Virus record (IMG/VR): IMGVR_UViG_3300046694_000296
Coordinates: 1 to 64,000 of that record
DNA length: 64,000 bases
Strand: one strand, 5' to 3'
In this document: positions 17,388-56,337 of the stretch, piece by piece
How positions within the stretch are numbered: position 1 is the first letter of the stretch
Layout of the letters: each line of letters opens with the position of its first letter
Notes under the pieces: model-generated
What the model was told of the DNA's origin: nothing
The model's database searches: none
What the model saw: only the letters and a program-made list of their open reading frames with translations
Translations under genes and position numbers: made by a program

Positions 17388-22375
<4,988 letters not shown>

Positions 22376-26741: not shown

Positions 26742-27302
26742 GTGATGTCACTGATACCTTGTCCCGAATGCGAAGCTGAAGTCAGCACCAATGCCGCCGC
26801 GTGTCCCAAATGCGGGAATCCTTTGGCGTTCAAAACGGCAGAGCCGCTGAAGAAAATGCCCAGTCGGCTATTTGAGGTGGTCCGTGGAGCGGTAATAATC
26901 CTCCTTGCGTTCATCGCAATTCATTTTTACGTGGAATACGCAGGCAAGCAAACGACTACGAGCGTCGAACGCGAGCCCGCCGCGCGACCTGCCGTAACAG
27001 TCACCGCGGTCAGACTGCTGCACGACTACCAGGAGAATGAAGTAGCGGCTGACGACTACTACAAAGGGCGCGGCGTGTCCGTGGACGGAATAGTCCAAGG
27101 CATTAAGAAGGATTTTAGGGACAACACGTTCATTCAACTTCGCACCGCAGAACGGTTCTCACCAGTTCACGCCTACATTAAAGCGAGCCAAGGGAAGGTC
27201 GCGGCAGACCTTGAACGAGGAGATAAGGTTCACGTCGACTGCACTGGAGCTGGAATGATTGTTGGCTCGCCGATCCTGAACAACTGCGACGTATCGCGCT
27301 AA
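26742..27302 (+). CDS. Accessory membrane protein: zinc ribbon - TM - OB-fold-like domain
   Basis: CPEC..CPKCG ribbon, one TM, 'Y.ENEVAAD..YKG..V.V.G.V' OB-like motif; more AT-rich codon usage. Confidence 0.7.
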   Translation: MMSLIPCPECEAEVSTNAAACPKCGNPLAFKTAEPLKKMPSRLFEVVRGAVIILLAFIAIHFYVEYAGKQTTTSVEREPAARPAVTVTAVRLLHDYQENEVAADDYYKGRGVSVDGIVQGIKKDFRDNTFIQLRTAERFSPVHAYIKASQGKVAADLERGDKVHVDCTGAGMIVGSPILNNCDVSR

Positions 27303-27358: not shown

Positions 27359-27481
27359 GTGGAACACTTGGGGCTCGGAAGCGCGTCCCTCTATATCTAT
27401 CCCATTTTCAATTCTTTCTATACTGATAAGTAGAAGCTTATTTTAATTTAGGGAACCGCGAGGAAGCCCCAAGTGATCCAC
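27359..27481 (+). promoter_or_regulatory. Long inverted repeat enclosing an AT-rich loop with TATACT; 3' arm covers the GTG start of ORF 27473
   Basis: GTGGAACACTTGGGGCT (27359-27375) / AGCCCCAAGTGATCCAC (27465-27481), 16 of 17 paired; inner CGCG and TCCCT/AGGGA pairs. Confidence 0.6.
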
Positions 27482-28174
27482 CACACCACGTTTTACGGCA
27501 AAGAACTGACGGTCGCGGACTGCGAAATCCTCGCGCTGACCCGCGTCGATCCCTCGCTGCGGGCGGCCGAGAGCCTGCTTTTCGGCCGCAAGTGGTTCGA
27601 CTACCGCGTCTTCCACCCCGTGCAAGCCACCTATCTCTTCGCCCACGAATACGCGGAAAGCACCAAGCGCGCATACGCCCGCCAAAAAGACATTCGCACA
27701 GTCGCGGGCGTGCAGGGGTTCGATGTCGAAAAGCTTTTCGAGAACCGCGAACTCTCCGCGATGTGGCGGGCACGTCAATCCTTTGATGCGATCGGCTGCC
27801 GCTACGACTTCGCCATCGACTTCATCATGAGGCGATTCTGTGAGCGCGGCTGGAGAGTGTGCCCCCGGCCCAACCAGCTCTACGCGGAGGAGGTCGTGCT
27901 CGACGTGCGCGACGCCTGGCAGCGCGAGTGCAAGGCAAAGATGCAGATCGCCAAGCAAGAGCGGTTCGATGCGCGCCGCTACACCGGCCACCCCGACCAG
28001 AAAGCCTACCAGGCGTGGCAAGTCGATCAGGTCAAAACCCGCGGCGGCAACCGAGCCATGCTGCTCGGACGACTGCTGCAGGAGAACGTGCTCGCCGAAG
28101 CGGTAGTGAGCGCGGCATTCGGCGAGGCGACCCTCTTACAAGCACGCAAGTTCGTTGTCTCATCCAATAAGTAA
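27473..28174 (+). CDS. Conserved phage protein heading the replication cluster
   Basis: 233 aa, phage-like codon usage, AGGA RBS; function not recognised. Confidence 0.7.
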   Translation: MIHHTTFYGKELTVADCEILALTRVDPSLRAAESLLFGRKWFDYRVFHPVQATYLFAHEYAESTKRAYARQKDIRTVAGVQGFDVEKLFENRELSAMWRARQSFDAIGCRYDFAIDFIMRRFCERGWRVCPRPNQLYAEEVVLDVRDAWQRECKAKMQIAKQERFDARRYTGHPDQKAYQAWQVDQVKTRGGNRAMLLGRLLQENVLAEAVVSAAFGEATLLQARKFVVSSNK

Positions 28175-28236
28175 TTCGTTACTATACTGGTGAGCAGACG
28201 ACCTAACGTCTCATTCAATTCAACCCGGAGTTTCAC

Positions 28237-28689
28237 ATGAGCCTTACCCCCGAACAAGCCCGCGCCGAACAAGTCGCATATGGCCGCTCGACGCTGCGCG
28301 CCAACCCCGACTACCCGCGTCGCATTCAGCAACCCGCACGCGAAGGTTACGGCTCGCGCCCGCCGCTCGCACGCAAGCCGAACACCGGTGGTCACGACGT
28401 GATCCTGAAGGCGATGCAAGAGGGCGGCCAGAAGGCGACGATTATCACGCAGGGCGACGGCGTTGCGTTCGAAGGCGTCATCACGGGTCGCGACAAATAC
28501 ACGATCACGCTCAAGACGGCGCACCCGGACAAAGAGCGTGCGGCTGCGGGCGAGACGGTTCGCCGTGTGTTCTACAAAAGCGCCATCGAGCAGTTCTGGG
28601 GCGAAGAGGTCCGTCGCAACATTCACGACACCGAGCGCGACGAAGAAGGCTTCCGGTCGCTCGCTGAAATGACCAAGGCGGTGAACTGA
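28237..28689 (+). CDS. Hfq/Sm-like RNA-binding protein
   Basis: HDVILKAM (cf. QDPFLNAL), DGVAFEGVITGRDKYTITL (Sm1), VFYKSAI (cf. MVYKHAI, Sm2). Confidence 0.72.
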   Translation: MSLTPEQARAEQVAYGRSTLRANPDYPRRIQQPAREGYGSRPPLARKPNTGGHDVILKAMQEGGQKATIITQGDGVAFEGVITGRDKYTITLKTAHPDKERAAAGETVRRVFYKSAIEQFWGEEVRRNIHDTERDEEGFRSLAEMTKAVN

Positions 28690-30077
28690 TGACCGCAGCC
28701 GCTCCCGCACTCACCGTGGTGCCGGCGGCGAGGGCGGTCGAGGAACCTCCCAAGTTCAACTTTGACGCGGAGTTCCAGGCACGCATCGCCGCGCTGACGC
28801 TGCGCGACACGACCTTCAACGGAATGGTCGACGGGCTTATCCGTCCCGAATATTTCGAGTCGGAGATCGAAGCCTACCTCGTGGGCACGACGCTGCGTTA
28901 CTTCGGCAAATACAAGAAGGCGCCCTCGGGCTTGCCGATCTACGCCTCGCTCATTCGCGAGGACATTGATTCGAAGGTGCTGCCGAAGAACCTCGCGGCT
29001 GCCGCCATCGGCCGGCTGAAGGAGCTTTTCACCGAAGACATCTCGGATCGCAACTACGTTGTCGATCAGATCGCTACCTTCGCCCGCCACCAGGCGGTGC
29101 AAGAAGCGATGTTCAAGGCGATCCCGATGCTCGACAAGGGCAACTTCGATGCGATCTCCACGCTCATGCGTGGCGCGCTCGACGTGGGCGCGACGACCGG
29201 CGACGACGAGTATGACTACGGCGCCGAGATCGACAGTCGCACGGCCACGCGCTTGCAGCGCGCCGCGGGCACCGCGCCGCCGAGCGGGATCACGACCGGT
29301 TACAAGGTGATCGACGAGCTCCTGTATCACAAAGGCTGGGGGCGCAAGGAGCTGCAGGTGATTCTCGGCGGCCCGAAAGCGGGCAAGACGACGAGCCTGA
29401 TCGACTTCGGCCTGAACGCATGGGCCGCTGGCTACAACGTGCTGTATGCGTCGTGCGAAGTGGGCAAGGACGTCATCAGCGCCCGGATGGACGCGAACGT
29501 CTCGCAGACGCTCTTCAAGGAGCTCGACCACCACACGCACGAAGTCCGGCAGAAGGTGTCGGACTACGTGAGCAAGTGCCTGCGATCGGACGGCACGAAG
29601 TCGGCATTCAAGGTCCACGAATACCCGACGGGCGGGCTGAAGCCTTCGGAGCTGCGGCGTCTCCTCGAGCGCTACAAGGCGAAGGGCGTCAAGTTCGATC
29701 TGGTGATCGTCGACTACGCCGACATCATGTGCCCGGAGCGGCACACCGACAGCGCCATCGAGAACAGCAAGTCGATTTACGTGGACCTGCGCGGTATCGC
29801 CATTCACGAAGACTGTGCGGTGCTGACGGCAACACAAGCGAACCGGGTAGGGGCGAGCGCGAACGTCATCAAGATGGATCACGTCGCGGACGACTTCAAC
29901 AAGGTCCGTATTGCTGACCTCATGATTTCGATTAACCGCACCGACGAAGAGCGCGCAGCGGGCCGGGCCCGGTTGTTCTTCGCGGCGTCTCGCAATCAGG
30001 AGGGTGAATTCACCATCGAGATTGAGCAGGCGCTTGACCGCATGAAATTCATCACCCGAGTCCTCGGGTTCGTTTAA
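28689..30077 (+). CDS. dnaB: DnaB-like replicative helicase
   Basis: Walker A GGPKAGKT, 'LVIVDYAD', 'TATQANR'. Confidence 0.9.
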   Translation: MTAAAPALTVVPAARAVEEPPKFNFDAEFQARIAALTLRDTTFNGMVDGLIRPEYFESEIEAYLVGTTLRYFGKYKKAPSGLPIYASLIREDIDSKVLPKNLAAAAIGRLKELFTEDISDRNYVVDQIATFARHQAVQEAMFKAIPMLDKGNFDAISTLMRGALDVGATTGDDEYDYGAEIDSRTATRLQRAAGTAPPSGITTGYKVIDELLYHKGWGRKELQVILGGPKAGKTTSLIDFGLNAWAAGYNVLYASCEVGKDVISARMDANVSQTLFKELDHHTHEVRQKVSDYVSKCLRSDGTKSAFKVHEYPTGGLKPSELRRLLERYKAKGVKFDLVIVDYADIMCPERHTDSAIENSKSIYVDLRGIAIHEDCAVLTATQANRVGASANVIKMDHVADDFNKVRIADLMISINRTDEERAAGRARLFFAASRNQEGEFTIEIEQALDRMKFITRVLGFV

Positions 30078-30087
30078 GGAGCACGTT

Positions 30088-30426
30088 GTGAAAGAGCGTT
30101 CGTTGATCCTGATTTACCGCGACTGGACAGCCCTCAAGGCGTTTCGTGATACGCACCGCCTTTACGGCGCAATCCCTGCACGCGCCGATCGCCTGCAGAC
30201 CGACCTGATGGGTCGCATGGCGTTCGACTTCATGCTGGTGGACACCGAGCTCGCGCCGCACTGGGAGGACGAGCTCAATCGCCGTCAGTGCGTGCATGTG
30301 GTGCCGGTCGTGCGGCTGCGCTACCGCATCGTCGAGGCAATCGCCAACACCGTCGAGCGCGTGCTGCACCGCATTATCGCGGCCTTCTGCGTCGATCGCT
30401 GCCGGCGCGTGCGGGTGGTGCGGTGA
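30088..30426 (+). CDS. Hypothetical protein
   Basis: AAGGAG RBS; fills gap between helicase and primase. Confidence 0.55.
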   Translation: MKERSLILIYRDWTALKAFRDTHRLYGAIPARADRLQTDLMGRMAFDFMLVDTELAPHWEDELNRRQCVHVVPVVRLRYRIVEAIANTVERVLHRIIAAFCVDRCRRVRVVR

Positions 30427-31520
30427 ACGACGATCTCGGCGAGCTCCTCGAGCGCGTCGACATGGCTGCCTATCTCGACCGCGAGGGCATCTCCTACCGG
30501 GAGACGCACGGACGGTCGGGCCAGCAGTTGAACATTCGCGAGTGCCCGCTGTGCGGCAACAGCGATTGGAAGGTCTACGTCAATGCTGAGTCGGGCGTGG
30601 GCAACTGCTTTGCAGGCTCCCACCCGGCTGAAGAGCGCTTCTTCACGAAATACAAGTTCATCCGTGCCCACCTCGGCTCGCCGATGGGCGGTAAGGTGGT
30701 CGATCACATTCGCGTGTTCGCGCGTGAAATGGGCTGGCGGCCCGCGCGACGCGTCTCAGCCAAGGTCGAGAACGCACCGGGCGCGTGGGAGTTGCCCAAG
30801 CACGTCACGCTGCCGCACAACGGGCAGAACATGCCGTATCTGGAGAACCGCGGGATCGACTCGGAGCTCGCCGCCTATTTTCACCTCGGCTACTGCGCGA
30901 ACGGGGCGAGCTTCCGATACCTGTCTGAGCGTGGCTGGGCCTCGCAGGACTGGTCCCGTCGCATTCTGATCCCGGTCTATGACCTCGACGGCAAGATCGC
31001 GACCTTCCAGGGGCGTGACGTGACGGGCCGGGCAGAAAAGAAATACCTGTTCCCGCCGGGCATCGACGGCTCGGGCGTGCACCTGTTCAACGGGCTGAAC
31101 GTCCGCGACACGAGACGTATCGTGGTGGGTGAGGGCGCATTCGACGTGGCGGCGACCAAGATCGCGCTCGACGGCGACGCCGAGCTGCGCGACGTGGTGC
31201 CGGTGGGCACCTTCGGCAAGCACCTCTCCTCGGGCAGCGAGAACAGCCAGCTCGCAAAGTTCCAGACGTTGAAAGAGCGCGGCGTCGAAGAGGTAACGCT
31301 CATGTGGGACGGCGAGGTCCAGGCCACCGACGACGCGATTGTGGCGGGCCTGCTGCTCAAGTCAGTCGGCTTGCGCGTGCGCGTGGCGATGCTGCCGGCA
31401 GGGTGCGATCCGAACGAGGTGTCGGCCGACGTAGTGCGCCAGGCGTTCTACCAGGCGAGGCTGCTCGACCGCCGCTCGGCGCTGGAAATCATGACGCTTC
31501 GTCGCAAAATGAATGGATAA
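30423..31520 (+). CDS. DNA primase (Zn-finger + TOPRIM)
   Basis: CPLC..C..H zinc site, 'YLENRGI', 'FQGR', 'VGEGAFD', 'WDGE', 'DPNE'. Confidence 0.9.
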   Translation: MNDDLGELLERVDMAAYLDREGISYRETHGRSGQQLNIRECPLCGNSDWKVYVNAESGVGNCFAGSHPAEERFFTKYKFIRAHLGSPMGGKVVDHIRVFAREMGWRPARRVSAKVENAPGAWELPKHVTLPHNGQNMPYLENRGIDSELAAYFHLGYCANGASFRYLSERGWASQDWSRRILIPVYDLDGKIATFQGRDVTGRAEKKYLFPPGIDGSGVHLFNGLNVRDTRRIVVGEGAFDVAATKIALDGDAELRDVVPVGTFGKHLSSGSENSQLAKFQTLKERGVEEVTLMWDGEVQATDDAIVAGLLLKSVGLRVRVAMLPAGCDPNEVSADVVRQAFYQARLLDRRSALEIMTLRRKMNG

Positions 31521-31568: not shown

Positions 31569-32045
31569 ATGCCAGGTTGTCAGATTCGCCGCAGGTTTTC
31601 GCACCACAAGCTCGGCACGAAGGCTTATCAGGTATGGGAAGTCCAGCACAACAACGCCGTGGTCGTGGTCTTCCAATACGGCTCTTTCACGATGGGTCGC
31701 GACGCGGTGACGATGGGCGGCACGATCGACGTGAACGAAGCGATGCACCCGATGAACGCCGACATGTTCGCGACGAAGAAGGTCACCGAGAAGAAGCGGC
31801 GCGGCTATGAGGAGTGGGTCGTCGAGACGTGCCCGTGCAGCGGCTACAACGACTTCCGCGAGATCCTCCAGACGGCATTCGGCAGCGGAAAGGCCAGCAC
31901 GATCGTCGCGAAACTGGATCAGTTCAACCTCGCTGTCGGGTCCAACCCCGCGCCAACGGTCGATCCCGAAAATGATGACAAGGGCAAAGCGAAAGCGCCC
32001 GCAATCGAAATCGAACAATCCTCGCCCGAATGGGGCAGCTGGTAG
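31569..32045 (+). CDS. WGR-like domain protein with C-terminal SPEWGSW
   Basis: 'KAYQVW....VVVFQYG....A..F..KKVTEKKRRGY' resembles WGR-domain pattern. Confidence 0.55.
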   Translation: MPGCQIRRRFSHHKLGTKAYQVWEVQHNNAVVVVFQYGSFTMGRDAVTMGGTIDVNEAMHPMNADMFATKKVTEKKRRGYEEWVVETCPCSGYNDFREILQTAFGSGKASTIVAKLDQFNLAVGSNPAPTVDPENDDKGKAKAPAIEIEQSSPEWGSW

Positions 32046-37968: not shown

Positions 37969-38712
37969 TCAAAGCGGCAGCGTGCCTTGGGGATTGCGCC
38001 GGAATTCGAACCGAATGTCCGTCACCTTGCGCCCCTCCTTAATCGGCGACCACGTAATGTCCCATCCGTCTTTCTCCTGCAACTCCTTCACGGCGACCTC
38101 GATGATCTGCTTGCGAGCGTCCTTGAAGTTCTGCAGATGGCTCGGCTTCGCGTCCATCGCGTGCAGGAAGTCCTTGATGGGCATCTGACGCCAGCCGGTG
38201 TCTTTGAACTGCATGAGGAGCTCGAGCAGCCGCCACGAGTAGATCGAGCGAAGCTCCGACGCCTGGCGCAAGAGATAGGTCGTGTGGTTGCCTCGCAGCA
38301 CCATCAGATACGGCGTCGCTTCCGGCGAGAAGCGCAGCTCCACCCACCCTGCCCTGTCCACGTAAGTCGCCCCGCTCACCCACCGATCCTTGTGGGCCGC
38401 GATCGCACCGCGCTGCACCGGCTCGGTCCAGGTGATCCATCGCTCCGCGAGCCCCTCGACGCCGGACTTCAGTTGCTCGTAGGCGGTCGTGGGATCGAGA
38501 TTGAATGTCTCGGCGTATTCCTTCGCTGTCAGTCGCACCTTGTAGCGGTTGTGACTGTCAAGGCGCACACTGTCGATCTTCGCGGCGCACGACTTGACGA
38601 TGCGCTGCTCGGCAAGCGTCTTGAGCCCATGCGAGGCGACCAGGAGGTCGTTGTGCATGGAGACGTGTCGATCAACGAGACTCAGCCCAGGAGTGGCGTG
38701 CTTGAGCTTCAT
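37969..38712 (-). CDS. Plasmid replication initiator (Rep_3/RepB family)
   Basis: 'NDLL.AS..L.L.EQR', 'W V....Y....G.V.L.FS....PYL', 'L.S.YS.RL.ELL.QF', 'GRKV....F.F'. Confidence 0.92.
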   Translation of the reverse strand: MKLKHATPGLSLVDRHVSMHNDLLVASHGLKTLAEQRIVKSCAAKIDSVRLDSHNRYKVRLTAKEYAETFNLDPTTAYEQLKSGVEGLAERWITWTEPVQRGAIAAHKDRWVSGATYVDRAGWVELRFSPEATPYLMVLRGNHTTYLLRQASELRSIYSWRLLELLMQFKDTGWRQMPIKDFLHAMDAKPSHLQNFKDARKQIIEVAVKELQEKDGWDITWSPIKEGRKVTDIRFEFRRNPQGTLPL

Positions 38713-39175: not shown

Positions 39176-39547
39176 TCAGTCCATGCCCAGGCGCTTCTTC
39201 TCGCGCGCGACTTCCTTGGCTACCGCCTCGGCGATGAAGTCGTTCTTGGTCTTGCCGAGCGCGAAGCAGAGCAGGTTCAAATCCTCCTTCAGCGCTGGCG
39301 GGATGCGAACCGGCTGCTGCACCGGCGTCTCCTTCTTCGGCAGCGCCGCGCGGATGGCCTGCAGATCCACACCTTTACCCACGCGAACCGGCGCCCTCCT
39401 CTCTGCAACGACCACCGGCTCAGGTGCTTGGTCCTCTATCTCCCCCGCCTGAGCTGCGGGCGCCGGCTCATCAATGGCCGCCGTCTCTGCATTCAGGCTG
39501 TCGAGCCACGCTTTGCTTTTCGGTGCGCTCATCGGGTCTTTGCTCAT
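39176..39547 (-). CDS. Partition adaptor, ParG-like ribbon-helix-helix protein
   Basis: Disordered N-terminus plus 'QQPVRIPPALKEDL......GKTKNDFIAEAV' RHH; downstream of parA. Confidence 0.75.
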   Translation of the reverse strand: MSKDPMSAPKSKAWLDSLNAETAAIDEPAPAAQAGEIEDQAPEPVVVAERRAPVRVGKGVDLQAIRAALPKKETPVQQPVRIPPALKEDLNLLCFALGKTKNDFIAEAVAKEVAREKKRLGMD

Positions 39548-40200
39548 GAAAACACTCCAAGGTAAAGGTCTTTCATTTCGTTGGCAGCGGCACTATCCCA
39601 ATCCCGGCCCGAGAGCTCGGACACCGCCCTCCCCTGCGCATTGGCGAACTTGTAGGTTTCACGCGTCGCGACCAGCTTCGTCAGGACCGGCAGCTTGTCC
39701 TCGAACGGCTCCAACTGTTTGATCATCGACTTGGTGAAGCGCTTGCGCGGATCGGCCTGATTGAGCACCACGCGAATGTCGATCTGGCGTTTGTAGCTGC
39801 CGACCAGTGCGTGTAGATCGGGCACCGTGTCGAGGTCCATCTGCGACGGGATCAGCGGCGCGAGCACCTTCTCAGCGACGGCCAGGCCGTAGCGGAAGCC
39901 GTCCGAGTCCTTGCCGCCGACGTCGATGAAAACGTCCTGATACTGATCGGTGAGACGATCGAGCACCTCGGCGAATTCCTGCTTCGTGATCGGCTTGCGC
40001 GGTTCCCACCGCTCGACATGGACCTGCGGAAGAGCCGGGTCGTTAGCGCGGCGTGCCGCCCACTTCGCGGTGCTGTTTTGTCCGTCGAGGTCGAATACGG
40101 CAACCGTGCGCTTGAGCGATGCCCGGATCGCTGCCAAATTCTGGGTGAAGGTAGATTTGCCCACGCCTCCCTTCTCTGTTCCCACCATAATTACGGCCAT
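39544..40200 (-). CDS. parA: ParA partition ATPase (type Ib)
   Basis: Deviant Walker A KGGVGKST, 'DLDGQ', 'FIDVGG'; no N-terminal HTH. Confidence 0.92.
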   Translation of the reverse strand: MAVIMVGTEKGGVGKSTFTQNLAAIRASLKRTVAVFDLDGQNSTAKWAARRANDPALPQVHVERWEPRKPITKQEFAEVLDRLTDQYQDVFIDVGGKDSDGFRYGLAVAEKVLAPLIPSQMDLDTVPDLHALVGSYKRQIDIRVVLNQADPRKRFTKSMIKQLEPFEDKLPVLTKLVATRETYKFANAQGRAVSELSGRDWDSAAANEMKDLYLGVFS

Positions 40201-40310
40201 AGAAGCCTCGATTGAATGTGTGAATTGTGCGTAGAGTAAAGGCTTGCGCCCCACACTTCAAGTAGATTATGAGCATTTGGAACTACGTCGGAGCAATGCA
40301 AGCCACTATT

Positions 40311-41577: not shown

Positions 41578-41650
41578 GCGCCAAGACGCGACCGTTAGAC
41601 TTTTGTCTATCGAATTAAAACCGTTGTTTTTTCTCAATAGGGGAATGACC

Positions 41651-43954
41651 ATGCAGGTGAACAATCGTGTCCTCGTGATGCGCGAGGCGATCACCAAAAT
41701 TGTGCCGATGTTAACTCAACGCTCAGTGCGCGTGACGCAGCAAGGCACGCAAGCATTCGTTGAATACCACGGGACCACGCTGGAGGTGAAGCGCGTCAAC
41801 CTGCCGTATATCCCCGAAGACGCCAGCGACCAACTGCTCGACGCGACGCAGGGCTTCCTCGATCACGAGGTCGGCCACGTCCTGTTCACCGAGCAGCGCT
41901 TTGTGAAAAAGGCCGCGAAGCTCAAGGTCCACTCGCTGCACAACATGGTCGAGGACACGTTCGTCGAGCGGAAGATGGGCGAGAAGTTTCCGGGCTGCGG
42001 CTCGAACCTGACGCGCATGCACGGGTTCTTCCTCACCGAATACATCGACACTCAGCTCGCCGAAAAGCCCGAGCACTCAGCCGCAATCCTGATGGTGGTT
42101 GCGATTCGTGCATGGGCGGGCCAGCCCGCCTTCGTCGACTACATGAAAGACAAGTGGGAGTTGATGAAGGACGTCGTTGACCGTCTCGGTGCCGACTTCC
42201 CGAAGATGGTCCGGGGCGTAGACAGCACCGAGCAGGCGCTCAAGGTCGCGATCGAAGCGAAGAAGCGCCTCGAACCGAAACCGCAGCCGACGCCGCCCGC
42301 GCCGCCGATGACCCCGCCGCCGGCACCGCCCGAGCCGCCGAAGTCGAGCACGCCGCCCGAAGAGCCGCAAGAACCGCAGCAGGGCGGCCAGGGTGACGGC
42401 GAGCCCGACGAGGAAAACGAGAACGACGAGCCGCAGCAGCCCAACGACATGCCGAACTTGGGCGAGCCGGAACCCGAGCAGAGCGCGCCGAGCACCCCGC
42501 AGCCGGAAGGTGACGACGAGGACGACGAACCGAAGGGTGAGGAAGAACAGGAGCCCAACGGTGAGGAGGTTCAGGAGCCGGAACCCGAGCCGACGCCCGA
42601 AGCGGGTGACGAGGAAGACGAGCCCGCACCTGCGCCGAGCAACGAAGCGGGCGATGAGTCCGACGAGGGCGAAGGTGACGACAGCGACGACGAGGATGAA
42701 AACTCGAGCGGTGGCATGTCGGGCGAGGAAGGGGAGAACGACAGCGACGCCGAAGACGAAGGTGCACCGAGCGGCGCGGGTGACGGTCTGCCCGGCGGTG
42801 AGCAGTCTGAGGACAGCGCCGAGAGTGACTCGGGCGACGCAGGTGGTGAGGACGAGAACGGGGCCGGTCAGCAGGACGCGGGCGACCAGCACGGTCACGG
42901 CACGCCGGAAGCAGGGGAGGGCGATCCGACCGGTGGGCGCGATCCGAACGACGATCGCGACTTCATGAAGGAGCTCGAGGACGCTGATATCAAGGAGTTC
43001 GACGAGGCTGCGGCCGAAGCGCTCTCGAAGCAAGCCGTCGAAGCGACCAAGGGCGCGGATTACACCGTGTTCACCCGCGATGAGGACGTGATCGGCGTGC
43101 TCGAAGTGCCGGAGGAGTTCGGGCAAGAGACGGTCACGCACATGCAATCGAAGGTGGACCACATGATCGGCCCGCTCCAGAAAGACCTGCAGCGCGCCAT
43201 TGCTGCCCGCTCGCAAGCAATCTGGACAGGTGGGCACCGGCGCGGCCAGCTGCACGGTGCCTCGCTTGCCCGCGTGCTGACCGGCCGCGAAGACGTGTTC
43301 CGCCAGAAGCAGGTGTCGCGCACGAAAGACGTCGCCGTGTCGCTGCTCGTCGATGGCTCGGGCTCGATGTGGCAGCACGGCAAGATCAAGGTGGCCTCAT
43401 ACGCCGCGTATGCGCTCTCGGCCGTGCTCGACAACATCGGCATCACCAACGAGGTGCTCGCCTTCAGCACGAACGAGTTCAGCTACGGCACGCTCAAAGC
43501 GATGAGCGAGGAGGCCAGCCAGCACCGCCTGCGTTACTCGCGGGGCGCCGCACTTGAGATCCGCATCCTCAAGTCGTTTGCTGAGCGCATGACGCCGATC
43601 GTGCGCCGTCGCTTCGCGCTGCTCTCGCAGGGTGATGCAATGATGCAAGAGAACGTCGATGGCGAGAGCGTGCAAATCGCGAACCACCGTCTCCAGCAGC
43701 AGCGCGCGACGCGCAAGGTGATGATGGTGCTCTCGGACGGGATGCCTGCGGTCAACGGGCACCGTGCCCCGATCCTCGCGAAGCACCTCAAAGAGGTCGT
43801 CAAGCAGATCGAGAAGCGCGGCACCGACGTCGTAGCGCTCGGCATTCTCGACCCGTCGGTTAAACAGTTCTACGACCGCGCGCTCGTCCTGAATTCGGTC
43901 GAGGAGCTGCCGTCGCTGGTCATGAAGGAACTTCACCGCCTCCTGGTGCAGTAA
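41651..43954 (+). CDS. CobT-like vWA protein with N-terminal HExxH domain and acidic linker
   Basis: HEVGH at 41864-41878 plus 'NMVED'; about 250-aa Pro/Asp/Glu linker; MIDAS DGSGS and 'VLSDG'. Confidence 0.85.
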   Translation: MQVNNRVLVMREAITKIVPMLTQRSVRVTQQGTQAFVEYHGTTLEVKRVNLPYIPEDASDQLLDATQGFLDHEVGHVLFTEQRFVKKAAKLKVHSLHNMVEDTFVERKMGEKFPGCGSNLTRMHGFFLTEYIDTQLAEKPEHSAAILMVVAIRAWAGQPAFVDYMKDKWELMKDVVDRLGADFPKMVRGVDSTEQALKVAIEAKKRLEPKPQPTPPAPPMTPPPAPPEPPKSSTPPEEPQEPQQGGQGDGEPDEENENDEPQQPNDMPNLGEPEPEQSAPSTPQPEGDDEDDEPKGEEEQEPNGEEVQEPEPEPTPEAGDEEDEPAPAPSNEAGDESDEGEGDDSDDEDENSSGGMSGEEGENDSDAEDEGAPSGAGDGLPGGEQSEDSAESDSGDAGGEDENGAGQQDAGDQHGHGTPEAGEGDPTGGRDPNDDRDFMKELEDADIKEFDEAAAEALSKQAVEATKGADYTVFTRDEDVIGVLEVPEEFGQETVTHMQSKVDHMIGPLQKDLQRAIAARSQAIWTGGHRRGQLHGASLARVLTGREDVFRQKQVSRTKDVAVSLLVDGSGSMWQHGKIKVASYAAYALSAVLDNIGITNEVLAFSTNEFSYGTLKAMSEEASQHRLRYSRGAALEIRILKSFAERMTPIVRRRFALLSQGDAMMQENVDGESVQIANHRLQQQRATRKVMMVLSDGMPAVNGHRAPILAKHLKEVVKQIEKRGTDVVALGILDPSVKQFYDRALVLNSVEELPSLVMKELHRLLVQ

Positions 43955-44089
43955 ATCTTCCCGCAGGTGAATCACTTTGCCTGCATAGGATAGTAAGTGG
44001 TGACTTGACGTAGCCAAGAGTAACCACTTACTATTTCACCTGTAGCGAATCACAACCAATTTTAATTTTTCTCTGCATCGGAGGATTCA

Positions 44090-45301
44090 ATGAGCGATAC
44101 CGGCGACAAGATCTCTTGCCAGGAGTGCGGCGCGCTGACCCACGCGATCCAGTTGCACCTGCCGGAAGCCCACCCGGGCATGACCCTCGCCGACTACCAG
44201 GCGAAGTTTCCCGAAGCACCTGTGCTGTCCGAGCGCGCGAAAGCCGAGCTCGAGCGCCAGCGTGTCGCAAAGGCCGCTGCAGCGCCCGCAGTCACCGCCT
44301 CGATGGCCGGTAGCGCGCTGCCCGCTAACGTGGTCGCGCTGAACCCCGACGGCAAGACGACCGCCGCGATGCACGAGATCTTCGGCTTGGTCGATGGTCA
44401 TGGGAAACCTGTCGCAGCTGCCTTGAGCTCGCGCAAGGAACCCGTGCCGGTCACGATCTTCGCCTCCCCGCGCGACGCCGACATGGTGCCCGAGATCGAC
44501 GCAGGCTTCATTTTCGACATCGAAAACCTGAAGAATGCGCTGATGGCGATCGAGCTCCGCAAGAACCTCTACGTGTGGGGTCACGCCGGCACCGGTAAGA
44601 CGACGCTGATCGAACAGGTCGCGGCGCGCACCGGGCGTCCGGTCATTCGGGTGCAGCACTCGATCGGCACTGAAGAGTCGCACGTCCTCGGTCAGTGGGT
44701 GGTGCGTGGCGGGCAGACCGAGTTCCAGCCGGGCTTGCTCCCGCTCGCGATGCGCAACGGGTGGACCTACCTCGCGGACGAATACGACTTCGGTAACCCC
44801 GCGGTCCTCGCGGTCTACCAGCCGATTCTCGAACCGGGCAAGAGCCTGGTCATCAAGGATGCGCCCGACGAATGGCGCGTCGTGAAGCCGCACGAGAACT
44901 TCCGCTTCGTCGCAACGGGCAACACCAACGGTTCCGGTGACGACACGGGCCTCTATCAGGGCACGCAGATTCAGAACGCCGCGAACTACGACCGTTTCGG
45001 GATGGTCCTCGAAGCCGCCTACATGAAGCCGGAGCTCGAGTCGGCGATTCTCGTGCAGCGCTGCCGGATTCAGAAGAAGAACGCCGACTCGCTGGTCGAT
45101 TTCGCAAACCGCGTGCGCGAAGCCTACAAGAACAAGGAGATCGGCAGCACGATCTCCCCGCGATGCCTGATCGACGCGGCCGACATCGGTCTGCGACGCG
45201 CGAACTGGCGCGCGGGCGTGACGCTCTCCTTCATCAACAAACTCTCTGCGGTAGACCGCGCTGTCGTCGACGGCGTTGCATCGCGCATCTTCGACAAGTA
45301 A
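44090..45301 (+). CDS. CobS/MoxR-like AAA+ ATPase with N-terminal C2H2-like zinc finger
   Basis: CQEC..H...H; GHAGTGKT; 'ADEYD'; 'FRFVATGNT.G', 'DRF'. Confidence 0.9.
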   Translation: MSDTGDKISCQECGALTHAIQLHLPEAHPGMTLADYQAKFPEAPVLSERAKAELERQRVAKAAAAPAVTASMAGSALPANVVALNPDGKTTAAMHEIFGLVDGHGKPVAAALSSRKEPVPVTIFASPRDADMVPEIDAGFIFDIENLKNALMAIELRKNLYVWGHAGTGKTTLIEQVAARTGRPVIRVQHSIGTEESHVLGQWVVRGGQTEFQPGLLPLAMRNGWTYLADEYDFGNPAVLAVYQPILEPGKSLVIKDAPDEWRVVKPHENFRFVATGNTNGSGDDTGLYQGTQIQNAANYDRFGMVLEAAYMKPELESAILVQRCRIQKKNADSLVDFANRVREAYKNKEIGSTISPRCLIDAADIGLRRANWRAGVTLSFINKLSAVDRAVVDGVASRIFDK

Positions 45302-45325: not shown

Positions 45326-45964
45326 ATGCAATTGGCCCAATCGACTGTAACGAATGCCCGCACCTCCACGCGCTACGAGGACCACACGGGGATGCTGCAC
45401 AAACTGGCAAAACGCGGCTGGGGCCGGTTGCAGGAGGCAGGGCTCTCCCTGCCTTACGACGACGTGTTCCAGCAGATGTGCGAGTCGTTCGTGAAGTGTC
45501 AGGCGACCTACAAGGCTGACACCGGCTTCACGTTCTCGGCGTATTACGGTCGCTCGATCTGGAACAACTTCAACAAGTGGGCCGAGCGCCAGATCGAGGA
45601 AAAGCACACGCTTGGCCTCGTCTCGGTCGAGTCGCTGTGCGGCGCTGACGATGAAGGGGAGGGCGACGCCTACGAATTCATCGAGCAAGAGGACGAAGAC
45701 GACACGCCCGAAGATCGCCTGGCCGCGCGTCAGGAGAGCCACCGGCTCGCCCGCATGCTCTCGGACGACGCGAAGCGCATGGTGGCGCTGCTCGCGCACC
45801 AGACCCCGGCGCTTGAGCGCTGGATGGAGGAGCGCAACGCCCGGATGCTCAAGAAGACGCATCACATCAATCTGTGGCTGCTCGGCGAGTTCCTCGGTTT
45901 CGACCGCAACAAGACGAGCCGCCTGCGCCTGGAGCTCGAACGCGTCTACGGCGTGGAGCTGTAA
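45326..45964 (+). CDS. Sigma70-family-like factor (region 2 plus C-terminal HTH)
   Basis: 'DDVFQQ...F.K....Y....G.TFSAY....I.N' region-2 pattern; 'LSD..K' and 'LGEFLGFDR..TSRL' region-4-like. Confidence 0.65.
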   Translation: MQLAQSTVTNARTSTRYEDHTGMLHKLAKRGWGRLQEAGLSLPYDDVFQQMCESFVKCQATYKADTGFTFSAYYGRSIWNNFNKWAERQIEEKHTLGLVSVESLCGADDEGEGDAYEFIEQEDEDDTPEDRLAARQESHRLARMLSDDAKRMVALLAHQTPALERWMEERNARMLKKTHHINLWLLGEFLGFDRNKTSRLRLELERVYGVEL

Positions 45965-50639: not shown

Positions 50640-50785
50640 AGGATCTTTCAACCTTTTCGAGGTCCGGTAAGTGACGCGTTACTATACTTGACGATGCAGG
50701 GCGAGACGGTGACGAAGCTGTCACAGCCTCGTCCGCAAAACCTGTGACTTACTACCTCCAAACTCTGACTAAGGAAACAAAAACC

Positions 50786-51826
50786 ATGTCTACTCAAGCT
50801 CTGATGGAACTGCTGCAAAAGCGCAAGGCTGCAACCGGTGGTCAAAAGACGATCAAGCCGAAGGCTGGTCGCAACCGTTACCGCATCCTCCCGGGATGGC
50901 GCACGAACGGTGACCCGACGTTCTTCCATGACTTCGGCCAGCACTTCATCAAGGACGCGGCGGGGCAGGTGAAGGCGGTCTACATTTGCGCGGACAAGAC
51001 CTTCGGTCGTCCGTGCGAGGTGTGCGATGCGGTCGCGCAGGGCATCCAGATGTCCACCGACGACGTGCAGAAGAAGCGCGTCGAGGAAGCGAAGTCGAGC
51101 GGCCGCGTGCTGCTCAACGTCCTCGAGCTCGACGGCACGCAGCCGACGGTGCCGCAGATTCTCGAAGTCGCGCCGACGGTGTTCAACGGCAAGAAGGGCG
51201 TGGGCGGCATCATCGCGCTGTTCGACGAATGGCCCAACATGCTCGACCCGAACACCGGCAACGACATCATCGTCGAAAAGTCGGGCGCGGGCCTCGACAC
51301 GGCCTACAGCGTGCAGATCGCGGGTGCCTCGAAGCCGGTTCCGGCCGAAGCGCTCACGAAGCTGAACGATCTCGACGCCTACGTGATGCAGGAAAACGCG
51401 CAAGCGCAGCAGCGCGCTCTCGCCTCGGTGCGTCAGGTCGCGGGCCTCCCGGCCCCGACGCAGACCTACCAGCCGGCCGCAGCACTCCCGGCAGGTGCGT
51501 CGAACGTCTACACCGCGCAGGGGGCGACACCGTGGGAAGCCGACGAGACGCTCGACATCGGCACGCTCGCGAACCCGGCAGTGGCCGCAGCAGTTGCGAC
51601 GCCCGCTCAGCCGGTCGCAGCAGCGCCGGTGCAGCCCGCAACTGCCGAAGTGGCAGCGGCGGTCGCAGCGGTCGCCACGCAGGTTGCGCAGCCGGTGGCA
51701 GTCGCACAGCCCGCAGTCGCGACGCCTGCACCCGCAGCAGTGGCCCAGCCCGCAGTTGCAGCAGCCCCGGCTGCCGCAGCAGGCACGGGCGACCCGGAGC
51801 TCGACGCTCTGCTCGCGGGCCTGTAA
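50786..51826 (+). CDS. gp32-like single-stranded DNA-binding protein
   Basis: 'G.N.YRILP', 'HF....C....G..CEVC', 'DP..GND..V.K.G.GL.T.Y'; Ala/Pro linker and acidic tail DPELDALLAGL. Confidence 0.78.
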   Translation: MSTQALMELLQKRKAATGGQKTIKPKAGRNRYRILPGWRTNGDPTFFHDFGQHFIKDAAGQVKAVYICADKTFGRPCEVCDAVAQGIQMSTDDVQKKRVEEAKSSGRVLLNVLELDGTQPTVPQILEVAPTVFNGKKGVGGIIALFDEWPNMLDPNTGNDIIVEKSGAGLDTAYSVQIAGASKPVPAEALTKLNDLDAYVMQENAQAQQRALASVRQVAGLPAPTQTYQPAAALPAGASNVYTAQGATPWEADETLDIGTLANPAVAAAVATPAQPVAAAPVQPATAEVAAAVAAVATQVAQPVAVAQPAVATPAPAAVAQPAVAAAPAAAAGTGDPELDALLAGL

Positions 51827-55788: not shown

Positions 55789-56337
55789 ATGTCCATCGCC
55801 TCGTTCTTCTCGAAGCTCTTTCTGCACGCCGCCTCATGGGCGGTGCTGCTCTACGGCCTGCTCGCCCCGGCGCACGGCTACGAAAATCTCGCCGTGTTCG
55901 CGTTGGGCATGATTTCGGTCATGGGCCTCATCAGCACGATCGTCGGCGGCGGCGTCAGTTCGCTCGACGTGCCGGGCAGCTTCTTCGGCAAGCTCATGTT
56001 CCGGGCCTTCCAGATCTCGGCCGCGCTATTGGTCTTTGTCCTCGCCGAGCACGGGCACTTCGTAGCCGCCACGCTCATGACCCTCATGTGGTTCGTGCGA
56101 CAAGCCGCTTTCCGTGAAATGCGCATGCGCGAAAAAGCCTTCAAGGAGATTCTCAAGGAAGCGGCCGCCCGGTTCGACGAATTCGACGAGCAGATCCGCG
56201 CCGGGAAAGAGGTCGAGCAACCTGCATTCGGCACGAAAGCGACCACGGCCCAGGTGAAGGTCAATCCGAACGCCGCCCGTGACCCCGCCTTCGGTTATCC
56301 GTTCACCCCGAGCGACATCGCCGCGACCAGCGCGTAA
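55789..56337 (+). CDS. Membrane protein (about 4 TM)
   Basis: Hydrophobic N-terminal 100 aa; AGGAG RBS. Confidence 0.7.
   Translation: MSIASFFSKLFLHAASWAVLLYGLLAPAHGYENLAVFALGMISVMGLISTIVGGGVSSLDVPGSFFGKLMFRAFQISAALLVFVLAEHGHFVAATLMTLMWFVRQAAFREMRMREKAFKEILKEAAARFDEFDEQIRAGKEVEQPAFGTKATTAQVKVNPNAARDPAFGYPFTPSDIAATSA

What the first reader, a model, noticed from the sequence alone, without database searches (positions are those of the whole stretch)
28237..28689. Phage-encoded Hfq/Sm-like protein coupled to the replicative helicase
Seen: residues ~53-120 align by eye to Hfq: helix (HDVILKAM), Sm1 (G..FEG.I.G.DKYTI.L) and Sm2 (FYKSAI vs YKHAI). There is a ~12-aa insertion between Sm1 and Sm2 and an Arg/Pro-rich 50-aa N-tail. 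The gene has its own box+TATACT promoter and a TGATG overlap with dnaB. Established: Hfq is a hexameric sRNA chaperone, and the YKH His contacts RNA. Inference: a lytic-phase RNA chaperone or a dominant-negative subunit that poisons host Hfq rings, or an Sm ring repurposed for replication. Phage Hfq homologues are rarely described.
Basis: partly seen in the sequence, partly recalled or inferred. Interest (0 to 1): 0.82.

Follow-up and report, generated by a model that had tools for sequence, protein, structure and literature searches.

The report
Phage-specific divergent Hfq next to DnaB
The 150-residue gene is a real but strongly remodelled relative of the bacterial RNA chaperone Hfq, and it belongs to an unstudied phage-only subfamily that always sits just upstream of the phage's replicative helicase gene, so its job (RNA control or a role in replication) is still open.

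Summary
The ORF at 28237-28689 (+) encodes 150 aa. It has a basic, Arg/Pro-rich N-tail, an Sm/Hfq core (residues 51-122) with a 12-residue insertion in loop L4, and an acidic C-tail. Its stop codon overlaps the DnaB start (TGATG).

The protein alone scores below Pfam's Hfq cut-off (17.9 vs 27 bits). A profile of 85 relatives hits 35 solved Hfq sequences (best E 2e-11). The AlphaFold core (pLDDT about 90) matches Hfq crystal structures (TM 0.72-0.89). Gly34, Asp40 and Lys56 (E. coli numbering) are invariant, but His57, Tyr25 and the rim arginine patch are replaced.

The gene belongs to a phage-specific subfamily of 361 clusters at 50% identity. In all 54 loci where both flanks could be read, it lies between a conserved protein of unknown, novel all-helical fold (phrog_2500) and DnaB. 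On the DnaB tree it looks like one old gain, long retention and rare loss. It is absent from the sister SSU5 group, so it is an accessory gene, not an obligate helicase loader.

Some relatives are already auto-annotated "Hfq", but I found no paper on them. My verdict is a new variant of a known kind. Identity is well supported; function is inferred only.

The parts
28167..28188 (+). Phage-specific promoter-like motif (ATAAGT box, 10-nt spacer, TATACT)
   Evidence: The motif has 4 copies in the window against 0 expected; all are on the + strand and intergenic. Looser copies are listed. It is conserved upstream of the orthologues in L002 and L004. It is not a sigma-70 -35/-10 arrangement (one search finds none here).
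28227..28230 (+). Shine-Dalgarno GGAG, 6 nt before the ATG
   Evidence: Read directly from the sequence. GGAG sits at the same place in L002, L003, L004 and L007.
28237..28689 (+). Hfq-like gene (150 aa), whole CDS including stop
28237..28386 (+). N-terminal extension (residues 1-50): predicted helix 5-21 carrying the family motif PEQxRxxQxxxGR, then a disordered Arg/Pro-rich linker
   Evidence: AF2 predicts helix 5-21 and gives pLDDT below 50 for residues 25-44. The pI is 10.8. The motif is present in 83 of 168 family members and absent in short members such as nickie gp117 and P0024.
28387..28602 (+). Sm/Hfq core (residues 51-122): helix 52-63 and strands 66-71, 77-85, 89-95, 107-113, 117-122
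   Evidence: The AF2 core has pLDDT 88-93. Foldseek top hits are Hfq structures with TM 0.72-0.89 and rmsd about 2-3 A. G52, H53, G80, D86 and K114 are invariant in 85 sequences.
28519..28554 (+). 12-residue insertion in loop L4 (A95-E106, short helix 99-103), on the distal face
   Evidence: Seen as a gap in hhalign against E. coli Hfq and in the AF2 secondary structure. The insertion is shared with nickie gp117. L4 points to the distal face (PMC3710371).
28603..28686 (+). Acidic C-terminal tail (residues 123-150, pI 4.8) with predicted helix 136-149
   Evidence: It is present only in the closest relatives.
28689..30077 (+). DnaB-like replicative helicase; its start codon overlaps the Hfq-like stop by 1 nt
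   Evidence: phrog_19 E 3.8e-74; Pfam DnaB_C E 2e-13. Adjacency is conserved in 54 loci.
27473..28174 (+). Upstream partner gene (233 aa, phrog_2500, unknown function), always upstream of DnaB in this lineage whether or not the Hfq-like gene is present
   Evidence: phrog_2500 E 7.6e-49. The AF2 model is all-helical with pLDDT 93 and pTM 0.89. There is no PDB structural match (best E 2.0) and no PDB sequence match. Synteny is shown.
30288..31520 (+). DnaG-type primase, the next large gene in the same direction; no copy of the promoter motif lies before it
   Evidence: phrog_47 E 1.9e-47; Pfam DNAG_N. The next copy of the promoter motif is at 31517.

Best explanation

Shown:
- It has an Sm fold with the Sm1 Gly/Asp and the Sm2 Tyr-Lys.
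- It is under purifying selection.
- It has been kept at one fixed position, as first cistron after a phage-type promoter and directly ahead of dnaB and the primase gene. That covers a deep clade of roughly 105-112 kb SSU5/nickie-like siphophages and phage-plasmids.

Inferred:
- It assembles into an Hfq-like ring. The beta4/beta5 interface residues I117 and F120 are conserved.
- It binds single-stranded nucleic acid at a remodelled, more basic proximal pore. In E. coli numbering, H53 replaces Gln8, R85 replaces Phe39, K87 replaces Gln41, Y88 replaces Phe42, K114 equals Lys56 and S115 replaces His57.
- The distal A-tract site is not the canonical one: Tyr25 is Ile, Lys31 is Ala, and a 12-residue L4 turret is added. 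The RRER rim patch is replaced by QEGG. It is therefore unlikely to be a like-for-like substitute for host Hfq.

Most likely role: an accessory RNA-binding protein made together with the replication proteins. It would act on phage transcripts, or on RNAs tied to replication or plasmid-copy control, rather than as a general sRNA-mRNA matchmaker.

Confidence is split. That it is a genuine Hfq-family homologue: about 0.9. That it acts mainly on RNA as an accessory regulator or chaperone: about 0.4.
For: Homology:
- Pfam Hfq is the top hit.
- 15 of 22 close relatives hit Pfam Hfq, best E 4.8e-7.
- The 85-sequence profile hits 35 PDB Hfq sequences plus one cyanobacterial Hfq-like protein (3hfn) and nothing else, with E from 2e-11 to 5e-3.
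- hhalign gives 96% probability, E 2e-9.
- My own HMM of 170 sequences scores E. coli Hfq at 35 bits across residues 9-71.

Fold: the AF2 core has pLDDT about 90 with alpha-beta5 topology. There are 78 Foldseek PDB hits at E<=1e-3; the 50 best listed are Hfq apart from three entries of one cytochrome.

Conserved sites: G80 (Gly34), D86 (Asp40) and K114 (Lys56) are invariant. The Sm2 position is His in 111 and Ser in 32 of 145 scorable relatives. The roles of these residues in Hfq are taken from PMC5379935.

Selection: dN/dS is 0.25-0.46.

Accessory status: the gene is absent in SSU5, V1VFA-S and 17 IMG/VR loci that keep phrog_2500-DnaB. The DnaB tree needs only 3 changes against 25.5 in shuffles.

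The phage has its own SSB, polymerase, primase, ligase and recombinase. No obvious replication function is therefore missing that the Sm ring would have to supply.

Precedent for extrachromosomal Hfq acting on RNA: pXO1 Hfq3 (PMC5348863).
Against: - No direct evidence of oligomerisation or RNA binding.
- The protein fails the curated cut-offs: Pfam 17.9 vs 27 bits, and no NCBIfam hit against a TIGR02383 cut-off of 61.7.
- His57 is lost in this sub-clade. His57 recognises the 3'-OH of U-tails and helps discriminate RNA from DNA (PMC5379935). With Gln8 also replaced, RNA specificity is weakened, and ssDNA binding is equally conceivable.
- The unbroken linkage to dnaB in 54 of 54 loci fits a replication role at least as well as an RNA-regulatory one.
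Confidence: 0.45

Rival explanations
1. Replisome accessory. The Sm ring works physically with the DnaB hexamer and/or the phrog_2500 protein. It could help load or stabilise the helicase, bind the displaced ssDNA, or handle RNA at the origin (R-loop or primer RNA annealing) so that DnaB and primase can start.
For: - The gene always lies between phrog_2500 and dnaB, with a gap of -8 to +36 nt to the nearest in-frame DnaB start, in 54 of 54 loci spanning DnaB divergence down to about 41% identity.
- It shares a promoter motif with the SSB gene.
- The proximal pocket has lost the RNA-discriminating His57 and Gln8 and gained Arg and Lys.
- E. coli Hfq is known to bind DNA (PDB 5uk7 appears among the structural matches; PMC3710371).
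- Phage helicase loaders are notoriously non-homologous and are usually encoded beside the helicase (PMC11087808).
- No recognisable loader was found here. DnaC-like PHROG hits occur only weakly on PhoH.
Against: - Sister lineages with the same phrog_2500-DnaB pair (SSU5 group, V1VFA-S, L046) lack it, so it cannot be an obligate loader.
- It shows no similarity to any known loader.
- Synteny inside a vertically inherited phage module can persist without functional coupling.
- Gene overlaps are common in this genome.
- phrog_2500 is the better positional candidate for a loader or initiator, because it co-occurs with this DnaB type everywhere.
Confidence: 0.27
2. Anti-host device. The protein would be a decoy that soaks up host sRNAs or Hfq partners such as RNase E. 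Or, it would be a poison subunit that co-assembles with host Hfq and disables host riboregulation during infection.
For: - It is an accessory gene that is gained and lost.
- Its RNA-binding faces differ from cellular Hfq, as expected for something that competes rather than substitutes.
- It has long, lineage-variable basic N-tails and acidic C-tails.
Against: - Only about 19-25% identity to cellular Hfq cores, and there is a 12-residue L4 insertion, so mixed rings are improbable.
- Takeover genes are usually early, fast-evolving and positionally mobile. This one is fixed in the replication operon and evolves slowly.
- There is no evidence of interaction with host factors.
Confidence: 0.1
3. 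Spurious or decaying ORF with a chance resemblance to Hfq.
For: The single sequence is below the Pfam and NCBIfam thresholds. It has no PHROG hit and no INPHARED tblastn hit.
Against: - Hundreds of conserved relatives exist.
- dN/dS is below 0.5.
- The promoter motif and SD are conserved.
- The AF2 core is confidently predicted.
- The family profile hits Hfq at E 2e-11.
Confidence: 0.01

Closest known systems
Bacterial Hfq (E. coli, S. aureus, B. subtilis; Pfam PF17209)
   Same: - N-terminal helix plus five-stranded bent sheet.
- Sm1 Gly34 and Asp40, and the Sm2 aromatic-Tyr-Lys-x-Ala-Ile motif.
- An aromatic residue at the Phe42 position.
- The family profile hits solved Hfqs at E down to 2e-11, and TM scores reach 0.89.
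   Different: - A 12-residue L4 insertion.
- Gln8 is His (invariant across the family) and His57 is Ser in this sub-clade.
- Tyr25 is Ile and Lys31 is Ala.
- The rim RRER is QEGG, with new basic residues at the Asn13 and Phe39 positions (K58, R85).
- A 50-residue basic N-extension carries its own conserved motif.
- It is encoded in a phage replication operon rather than the miaA-hfq-hflX context.
- It falls below the curated family cut-offs.
Orthologues in isolated phages: Pseudomonas phage nickie gp117 and the Nickievirus group (Nican01, phiK7B1, ZY21, hairong)
   Same: - Same position between the phrog_2500-like gene and DnaB, overlapping dnaB.
- Same long L4 loop and the same GH(D/Q) and (D/N)YTIT motifs (93% probability, E 3e-7).
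- In Nican01 the gene is annotated hfq.
   Different: They are only 89 aa, lack the N-terminal motif and the acidic C-tail, and share about 30% identity. They are uncharacterised; the Nican01 paper does not mention Hfq.
Other mobile-element Sm/Hfq proteins: pXO1 Hfq3 of B. anthracis; the Sm-like protein of putative cyanophage origin (pentamer); 'Hfq-like domain' proteins of mycobacteriophages Tonenili and Phabba
   Same: These are extrachromosomal or viral copies of the Sm/Hfq fold (PMC5348863; PMC3710371; BFVD hits).
   Different: Hfq3 is a near-canonical Hfq whose distal face is functional. The cyanophage protein forms pentamers and lacks the N-helix. None of them is reported to be linked to a helicase gene, and their structural matches here are weak (TM 0.38-0.68).
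Phage replicative-helicase loaders (lambda P, DnaC/DnaI-like, T4 gp59, VdhL1/2)
   Same: They are small proteins encoded next to the helicase gene, and they are non-homologous between phage groups (PMC11087808).
   Different: There is no sequence or fold similarity. The Hfq-like gene is dispensable in sister lineages with the same helicase type.

Membership tests
Hfq (bacterial branch of the Sm superfamily) | Sm fold: N-terminal alpha-helix followed by five strongly bent antiparallel beta-strands | tested here: met
   The AF2 model has H52-63 and E66-71, 77-85, 89-95, 107-113, 117-122 with core pLDDT 88-93. Foldseek top hits are Hfq crystal structures with TM 0.72-0.89. This rests on a predicted structure, not a solved one.
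Hfq (bacterial branch of the Sm superfamily) | Score above the curated family thresholds (Pfam PF17209 gathering score 27 bits; NCBIfam TIGR02383 cut-off 61.7 bits) | tested here: not met
   Pfam gives 17.9 bits, E 0.0023. NCBIfam gives no hit for this protein and 15-26 bits for relatives. Some relatives do carry a precomputed PF17209 hit.
Hfq (bacterial branch of the Sm superfamily) | Statistically significant homology to Hfq over the whole Sm domain | tested here: met
   The 85-sequence profile hits 35 PDB Hfq sequences plus one cyanobacterial Hfq-like protein, E from 2e-11 to 5e-3, and nothing else. hhalign gives 96% probability, E 2e-9, aligning residues 53-126 to Hfq 8-68.
Hfq (bacterial branch of the Sm superfamily) | Sm1 motif with invariant Gly34 and Asp40 | tested here: met
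   G80 and D86 are invariant in 85 sequences and align to Gly34 and Asp40.
Hfq (bacterial branch of the Sm superfamily) | Sm2 motif YKHAI: Tyr55, Lys56 and His57, where His57 recognises the RNA 3' end | tested here: not met
   This protein reads FYKSAI. Y113 and K114 are present (K114 is invariant), but position 57 is Ser115. In the wider family the position is His in 111 and Ser in 32 of 145 scorable members. The role of His57 is from PMC5379935.
Hfq (bacterial branch of the Sm superfamily) | Proximal uridine pocket residues Gln8 and Phe/Tyr42 | tested here: inconclusive
   Y88 aligns to Phe42, so the aromatic residue is kept. Gln8 is replaced by His53, which is invariant in the family. Whether His can read uracil is unknown.
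Hfq (bacterial branch of the Sm superfamily) | Distal-face A-tract site with Tyr25 (and Lys31) in proteobacterial Hfq | tested here: not met
   I70 aligns to Tyr25 and A77 to Lys31. A 12-residue L4 insertion sits on that face (PMC3710371).
Hfq (bacterial branch of the Sm superfamily) | Rim arginine patch (Arg16, Arg17, Arg19) needed for RNA annealing | tested here: not met
   Q61, E62 and G64 align to the patch. In the family, 130 of 167 members have 0-1 basic residues in that hexapeptide. K58 (Asn13 position) and R85 (Phe39 position) put new basic groups in the lateral pocket.
Hfq (bacterial branch of the Sm superfamily) | Homohexameric ring | not testable with these tools
   Only single-chain prediction was available. 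The beta5 residues I117 and F120 are nearly invariant, which is compatible with a conserved subunit interface but does not prove one.
Hfq (bacterial branch of the Sm superfamily) | Binds A/U-rich ssRNA and accelerates sRNA-mRNA pairing | not testable with these tools
   This needs biochemistry (EMSA, annealing assays) or complementation of an hfq mutant.
Replicative helicase loader (lambda P, DnaC/DnaI, gp59, DciA, VdhL) | Sequence or fold similarity to a known loader | tested here: not met
   No loader family appears in Pfam, PHROGs or NCBIfam. The structural matches listed are Hfq, apart from three entries of one cytochrome.
Replicative helicase loader (lambda P, DnaC/DnaI, gp59, DciA, VdhL) | Present wherever the cognate helicase is present | tested here: not met
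   19 loci carry the same phrog_2500-DnaB pair without it, including SSU5 and V1VFA-S.
Replicative helicase loader (lambda P, DnaC/DnaI, gp59, DciA, VdhL) | Binds DnaB and stimulates its loading on ssDNA | not testable with these tools
   This needs pull-down and helicase-loading assays or multimer modelling.

The most novel reading that the evidence does not exclude
An Hfq/Sm ring has been recruited as a dedicated component of a phage replisome. It would be made with DnaB from one operon and work with the novel-fold phrog_2500 protein. Its job would be to prepare or hold single-stranded nucleic acid (origin R-loop RNA, primer RNA or ssDNA) for helicase loading. That would be a replication role not known for any Sm-family protein, and a new class of helicase-associated factor.
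Probability: 0.22. Interest if true: 0.85.

Novelty: new variant of a known kind. Interest (0 to 1): 0.58.

Why it matters
Hfq is the central RNA matchmaker of many bacteria, and phages are known to exploit host Hfq. Phage-encoded Hfq proteins, however, have essentially not been studied. I found no paper on them, PHROGs has no Hfq family that this protein hits, and isolate phage genomes contain almost none.

This work defines a sizeable phage-specific Hfq subfamily of 361 clusters at 50% identity. It has its own signature: KGHD, GRDK(F/Y)TIT, (I/F)YK(H/S)AIE, a long L4 loop and an optional N-terminal motif. Its genomic address is strikingly constant, between a novel-fold protein and the replicative helicase.

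If it is an RNA chaperone, it gives phages and phage-plasmids their own layer of riboregulation. If it works with the helicase, it would be the first replication role for an Sm ring. Either way it is directly testable, because cultured relatives exist: the Pseudomonas phage nickie group, and a Burkholderia cepacia isolate whose assembly carries an orthologue.

Tried and rejected
- Megablast of the 4.6-kb region and tblastn of the protein against 50,697 phage records found no match. Relatives in isolates were found only indirectly, through DnaB and BFVD.
- phmmer of the single protein against PDB gave only a chance eIF4E hit. The 22-sequence profile was still weak, with Hfq at E 0.33. Significance came only with the 85-sequence profile.
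- PHROGs gave no hit. E. coli Hfq itself only grazes phrog_13793 at E 0.015.
- NCBIfam gave no hit for this protein.
- The SSB-substitute idea was rejected because the phage has its own SSB at 50744-51826 (phrog_1192, E 1.4e-48).
- The obligate-loader idea was rejected on presence/absence.
- A 5'-UTR hairpin after the promoter is not better than shuffles in the window (z -0.19), though it is stronger in L002 (z -2.9). I did not rely on it.
- The sigma-70 scan finds no canonical promoter upstream of the gene.
- The search for related loci with the broad alignment A2 failed for lack of a conserved stretch. It was repeated with A1.
It was rerun without those rows.
- The protein-atlas search gave only sub-0.9 leads, to clusters carrying PF21979 Hfq_1 and PF17209.
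- Four literature searches found nothing on phage-encoded Hfq.
- The careful maximum-likelihood DnaB tree did not finish, so the quick IQ-TREE tree was used.
Full report
**1. What is in the sequence**

The ORF runs from the ATG at 28237 to the TGA at 28687-28689 on the + strand and encodes 150 aa. A GGAG lies 6 nt before the ATG. Codon-position GC (GC3 0.76 against GC2 0.48) matches the neighbouring genes.

The stop codon shares its last base with the ATG (28689) of a 462-aa DnaB-like helicase (phrog_19 E 3.8e-74; Pfam DnaB_C E 2e-13). Upstream lies a 233-aa gene of unknown function (phrog_2500, E 7.6e-49). Downstream of DnaB is a DnaG-type primase.

The sequence ATAAGTAATTCGTTACTATACT sits 48-70 nt before the ATG. 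This 21-base motif occurs four times in the window with at most 3 mismatches: before this gene, before the gene at 31569, before the SSB gene at 50744 and before the gene at 55789. All four are on the + strand and intergenic, against 0 expected. Looser copies exist. The motif is retained upstream of the orthologues in L002 and L004. The spacing of 10 nt between box and TATACT is not that of a sigma-70 -35/-10 pair, and the consensus scan sees no sigma-70 promoter here.

The TGATG overlap is not special in this genome, where about a dozen of 65 gene junctions overlap or abut.

**2. Is it an Hfq?**

On its own the protein is a borderline case:
- Pfam Hfq is the best hit but scores 17.9 bits against a gathering score of 27, and only over Sm1.
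- NCBIfam and PHROGs give nothing.
- PDB phmmer gives nothing.

The case is made by its relatives. The word-indexed search found 21 homologues (alignment A1). Of the 22 sequences, 15 hit Pfam Hfq, best E 4.8e-7. An exhaustive profile search found 361 cluster representatives at E<=1e-3 and 70 at E<=1e-10.

A profile of 85 of these (A2) hits 36 PDB sequences at E<=0.01. All are Hfq or the cyanobacterial Hfq-like protein, the best being B. subtilis Hfq at E 2.1e-11. hhalign of A2 against E. coli Hfq gives 96% probability, E 2e-9, over the whole Sm domain. E. coli Hfq was taken from NC_000913.

The AlphaFold2 model has a confident core (pLDDT 88-93) with helix 52-63 and five strands, plus a short helix in the inserted loop. 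Foldseek returns 78 PDB matches at E<=1e-3.

**3. How it differs from cellular Hfq**

The following uses the hhalign register and the residue roles summarised in PMC5379935.
- The Sm1 Gly34 and Asp40 are G80 and D86, both invariant in 85 sequences. Lys56 is K114, also invariant. Phe42 is Y88.
- Gln8, which reads uracil, is an invariant His (H53, in a KGHD motif found in 167 of 168 members).
- His57, which recognises the terminal 3'-OH, is Ser here. It is His in 111 of 145 scorable relatives, so this sub-clade lost it.
- Phe39 and Gln41 are Arg85 and Lys87, which gives a more basic pore.
- On the distal face Tyr25 is Ile70 and Lys31 is Ala77. The 12-residue insertion (A95-E106) lies in loop L4, which projects from that face (PMC3710371).
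- The rim arginine patch RRER is QEGG. Most family members have 0-1 basic residues there. K58 and R85 fall in the same lateral pocket.
- Residues 1-50 form a basic extension (pI 10.8). It has a predicted helix carrying a motif (PEQxRxxQxxxGR) shared by about half of the family, followed by a disordered Arg/Pro linker.
- Residues 123-150 are acidic (pI 4.8).

This is a remodelled Hfq, not a spare copy of the host protein.

**4. Where it lives**

The window equals the first 64 kb of IMG/VR contig 3300046694_000296. It encodes the following:
- Virion and lysis: large tail proteins.
- Replication and nucleotide metabolism: PhoH, DnaB, primase, ATP-dependent ligase, a large DNA polymerase matching phrog_405 (E 1e-291), SSB and ribonucleotide reductase.
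- Recombination and repair: an exonuclease, a UvsX-like recombinase, SbcCD and RuvC.
- Accessory genes: a CobT-like protein (phrog_1576/17276) and an adjacent ATPase matching phrog_249.
- Plasmid-type maintenance, on the other strand: a ParA-like protein and a replication-initiation protein.

By DnaB similarity the nearest isolates are Rhizobium phage V1VFA-S (45%), the Pseudomonas phage nickie group (44%) and the phage-plasmid Salmonella phage SSU5 (39%).

In nickie an 89-aa hypothetical protein (gp117) sits between the phrog_2500-like gene and DnaB and overlaps DnaB. It is an orthologue with the same long L4 loop (hhalign 93%, E 3e-7). It was also the second-best BFVD structural match. In the related phage Nican01 the gene is annotated hfq. 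NCBI names two cellular-assembly relatives "RNA chaperone Hfq". SSU5 and V1VFA-S have phrog_2500 directly followed by DnaB, with no Hfq-like gene.

**5. Survey**

I collected 80 IMG/VR loci through DnaB, 15 through the Hfq-like protein, 6 assembly contigs and 3 isolate phages.

- Every locus with an Hfq-like ORF, where both flanks could be read, has the order phrog_2500, Hfq-like, DnaB. That makes 39 loci plus 15.
- The distance from the Hfq-like stop to the nearest in-frame DnaB start is -8 to +36 nt.
- Nineteen loci have phrog_2500-DnaB only.
- Twenty-three distant loci (about 29% DnaB identity) have neither.

On a quick maximum-likelihood DnaB tree, the Hfq-positive loci form one large clade sister to the SSU5-like clade. 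One nested Hfq-negative pair (V1VFA-S and L046) sits inside it, and two long-branch negatives sit at its base. The tree needs 3 state changes, against 25.5 in shuffles.

The simplest history is one old insertion between phrog_2500 and dnaB, long retention under purifying selection (dN/dS 0.25-0.46) and occasional loss.

**6. What it probably does**

Shown: it is an Hfq-family fold, it is conserved, it sits behind a phage promoter motif, and it is co-transcribed or packed tightly with dnaB. Everything else is inference.

I favour a ring-forming single-strand nucleic-acid binder that acts as an accessory factor. The phage already has its own SSB, primase, ligase, polymerase and recombinase. Sister phages with the same helicase and the same phrog_2500 partner do without it. 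It is therefore not an obligate loader or SSB.

An RNA-directed role is the conservative reading and has a precedent in plasmid pXO1 Hfq3 (PMC5348863). Possible forms are post-transcriptional control of phage or plasmid-maintenance transcripts, or chaperoning of an RNA tied to replication.

A direct replisome role remains a serious rival, for two reasons. The linkage to dnaB is unbroken in 54 of 54 loci. The residues that make Hfq prefer RNA 3' ends are also the ones changed here.

The poison-subunit idea has no support and is made unlikely by the low identity to cellular Hfq and the L4 insertion. A spurious ORF is excluded.

**7. Novelty and score**

The fold and family are known. Some relatives are already machine-annotated as Hfq. 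Viral Sm-like proteins have been seen in structural genomics and phage annotation (PMC3710371).

What is new is a coherent, abundant, phage-specific Hfq subfamily with remodelled binding faces, an optional N-terminal motif and a fixed position ahead of the replicative helicase. Nothing has been published on it in the library searched.

I rate it a new variant of a known kind, with interest 0.58.

Noticed in passing
window 27473-28174 (+): The phrog_2500 protein (233 aa) is predicted with high confidence (pLDDT 93, pTM 0.89) as an all-helical fold. It has no structural or sequence match in the PDB (best Foldseek E 2.0). It precedes this type of DnaB in every SSU5/nickie-like locus examined, with or without the Hfq-like gene, which makes it a positional candidate for the helicase loader or initiator.
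   Followed up: partly
window 28167, 31517, 50667, 55713 (+); looser copies near 17397, 23414, 55273, 61080: A phage-specific promoter-like motif, (A/G)TAAGT-N6-GTTAC-TATACT, with a 10-nt box-to-hexamer spacing unlike sigma-70. It marks the replication genes, including SSB, and is conserved in related contigs. A weak sigma-factor-like gene lies at 45326-45964.
   Followed up: partly
source contig IMGVR_UViG_3300046694_000296 (215,656 bp); loci L091 and L098: The contig carries two copies of the phrog_2500/Hfq-like/DnaB module 108,345 bp apart. They are 100% and 92% identical to the window protein, and relatives are 104-108 kb. The contig therefore looks like two related genomes joined head to tail, either an assembly artefact or a mixed concatemer.
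   Followed up: no
window 37969-38712 (-) and 39544-40254 (-): A replication-initiation protein (phrog_4402, E 3e-48) and a ParA-like partition ATPase (phrog_164, E 5e-32) lie on the opposite strand. Together with DnaB similarity to SSU5, this suggests a phage-plasmid lifestyle.
   Followed up: partly
window 26742-27302 (+): A zinc-ribbon plus tRNA_anti-like OB-fold protein (Pfam E 1.3e-20; phrog_8545 'superinfection exclusion Sie-like', E 7e-25) sits between PhoH and phrog_2500. Its GC3 is unusually low (0.60), and it is absent at that place in several relatives, so it looks like a moron.
   Followed up: no
window 41603-45301 (+): A 783-aa protein matching phrog_1576 (unknown function, E 6e-179) and a CobT-like family (phrog_17276, E 4e-31) is followed by a 403-aa ATPase matching phrog_249 (labelled porphyrin biosynthesis, E 2.5e-87). 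A CobT_C gene also occurs in the related locus L003.
   Followed up: no
window 28189-28236 (+); L002 9946-10000: A short stem-loop lies right after the TATACT hexamer in the Hfq-like 5'-UTR. It is not significant in the window (z -0.19) but is stronger in L002 (z -2.9) with a different stem sequence. It could be a 5'-end stabiliser or a site for autoregulation.
   Followed up: partly
L066 and L042 (IMG/VR relatives): In L066 the open frame holding DnaB is about 2.8 kb, roughly twice the usual length. In L042 only a C-terminal piece of DnaB matches in one frame. These could reflect an intein or insertion, or a frameshift, in dnaB.
   Followed up: no
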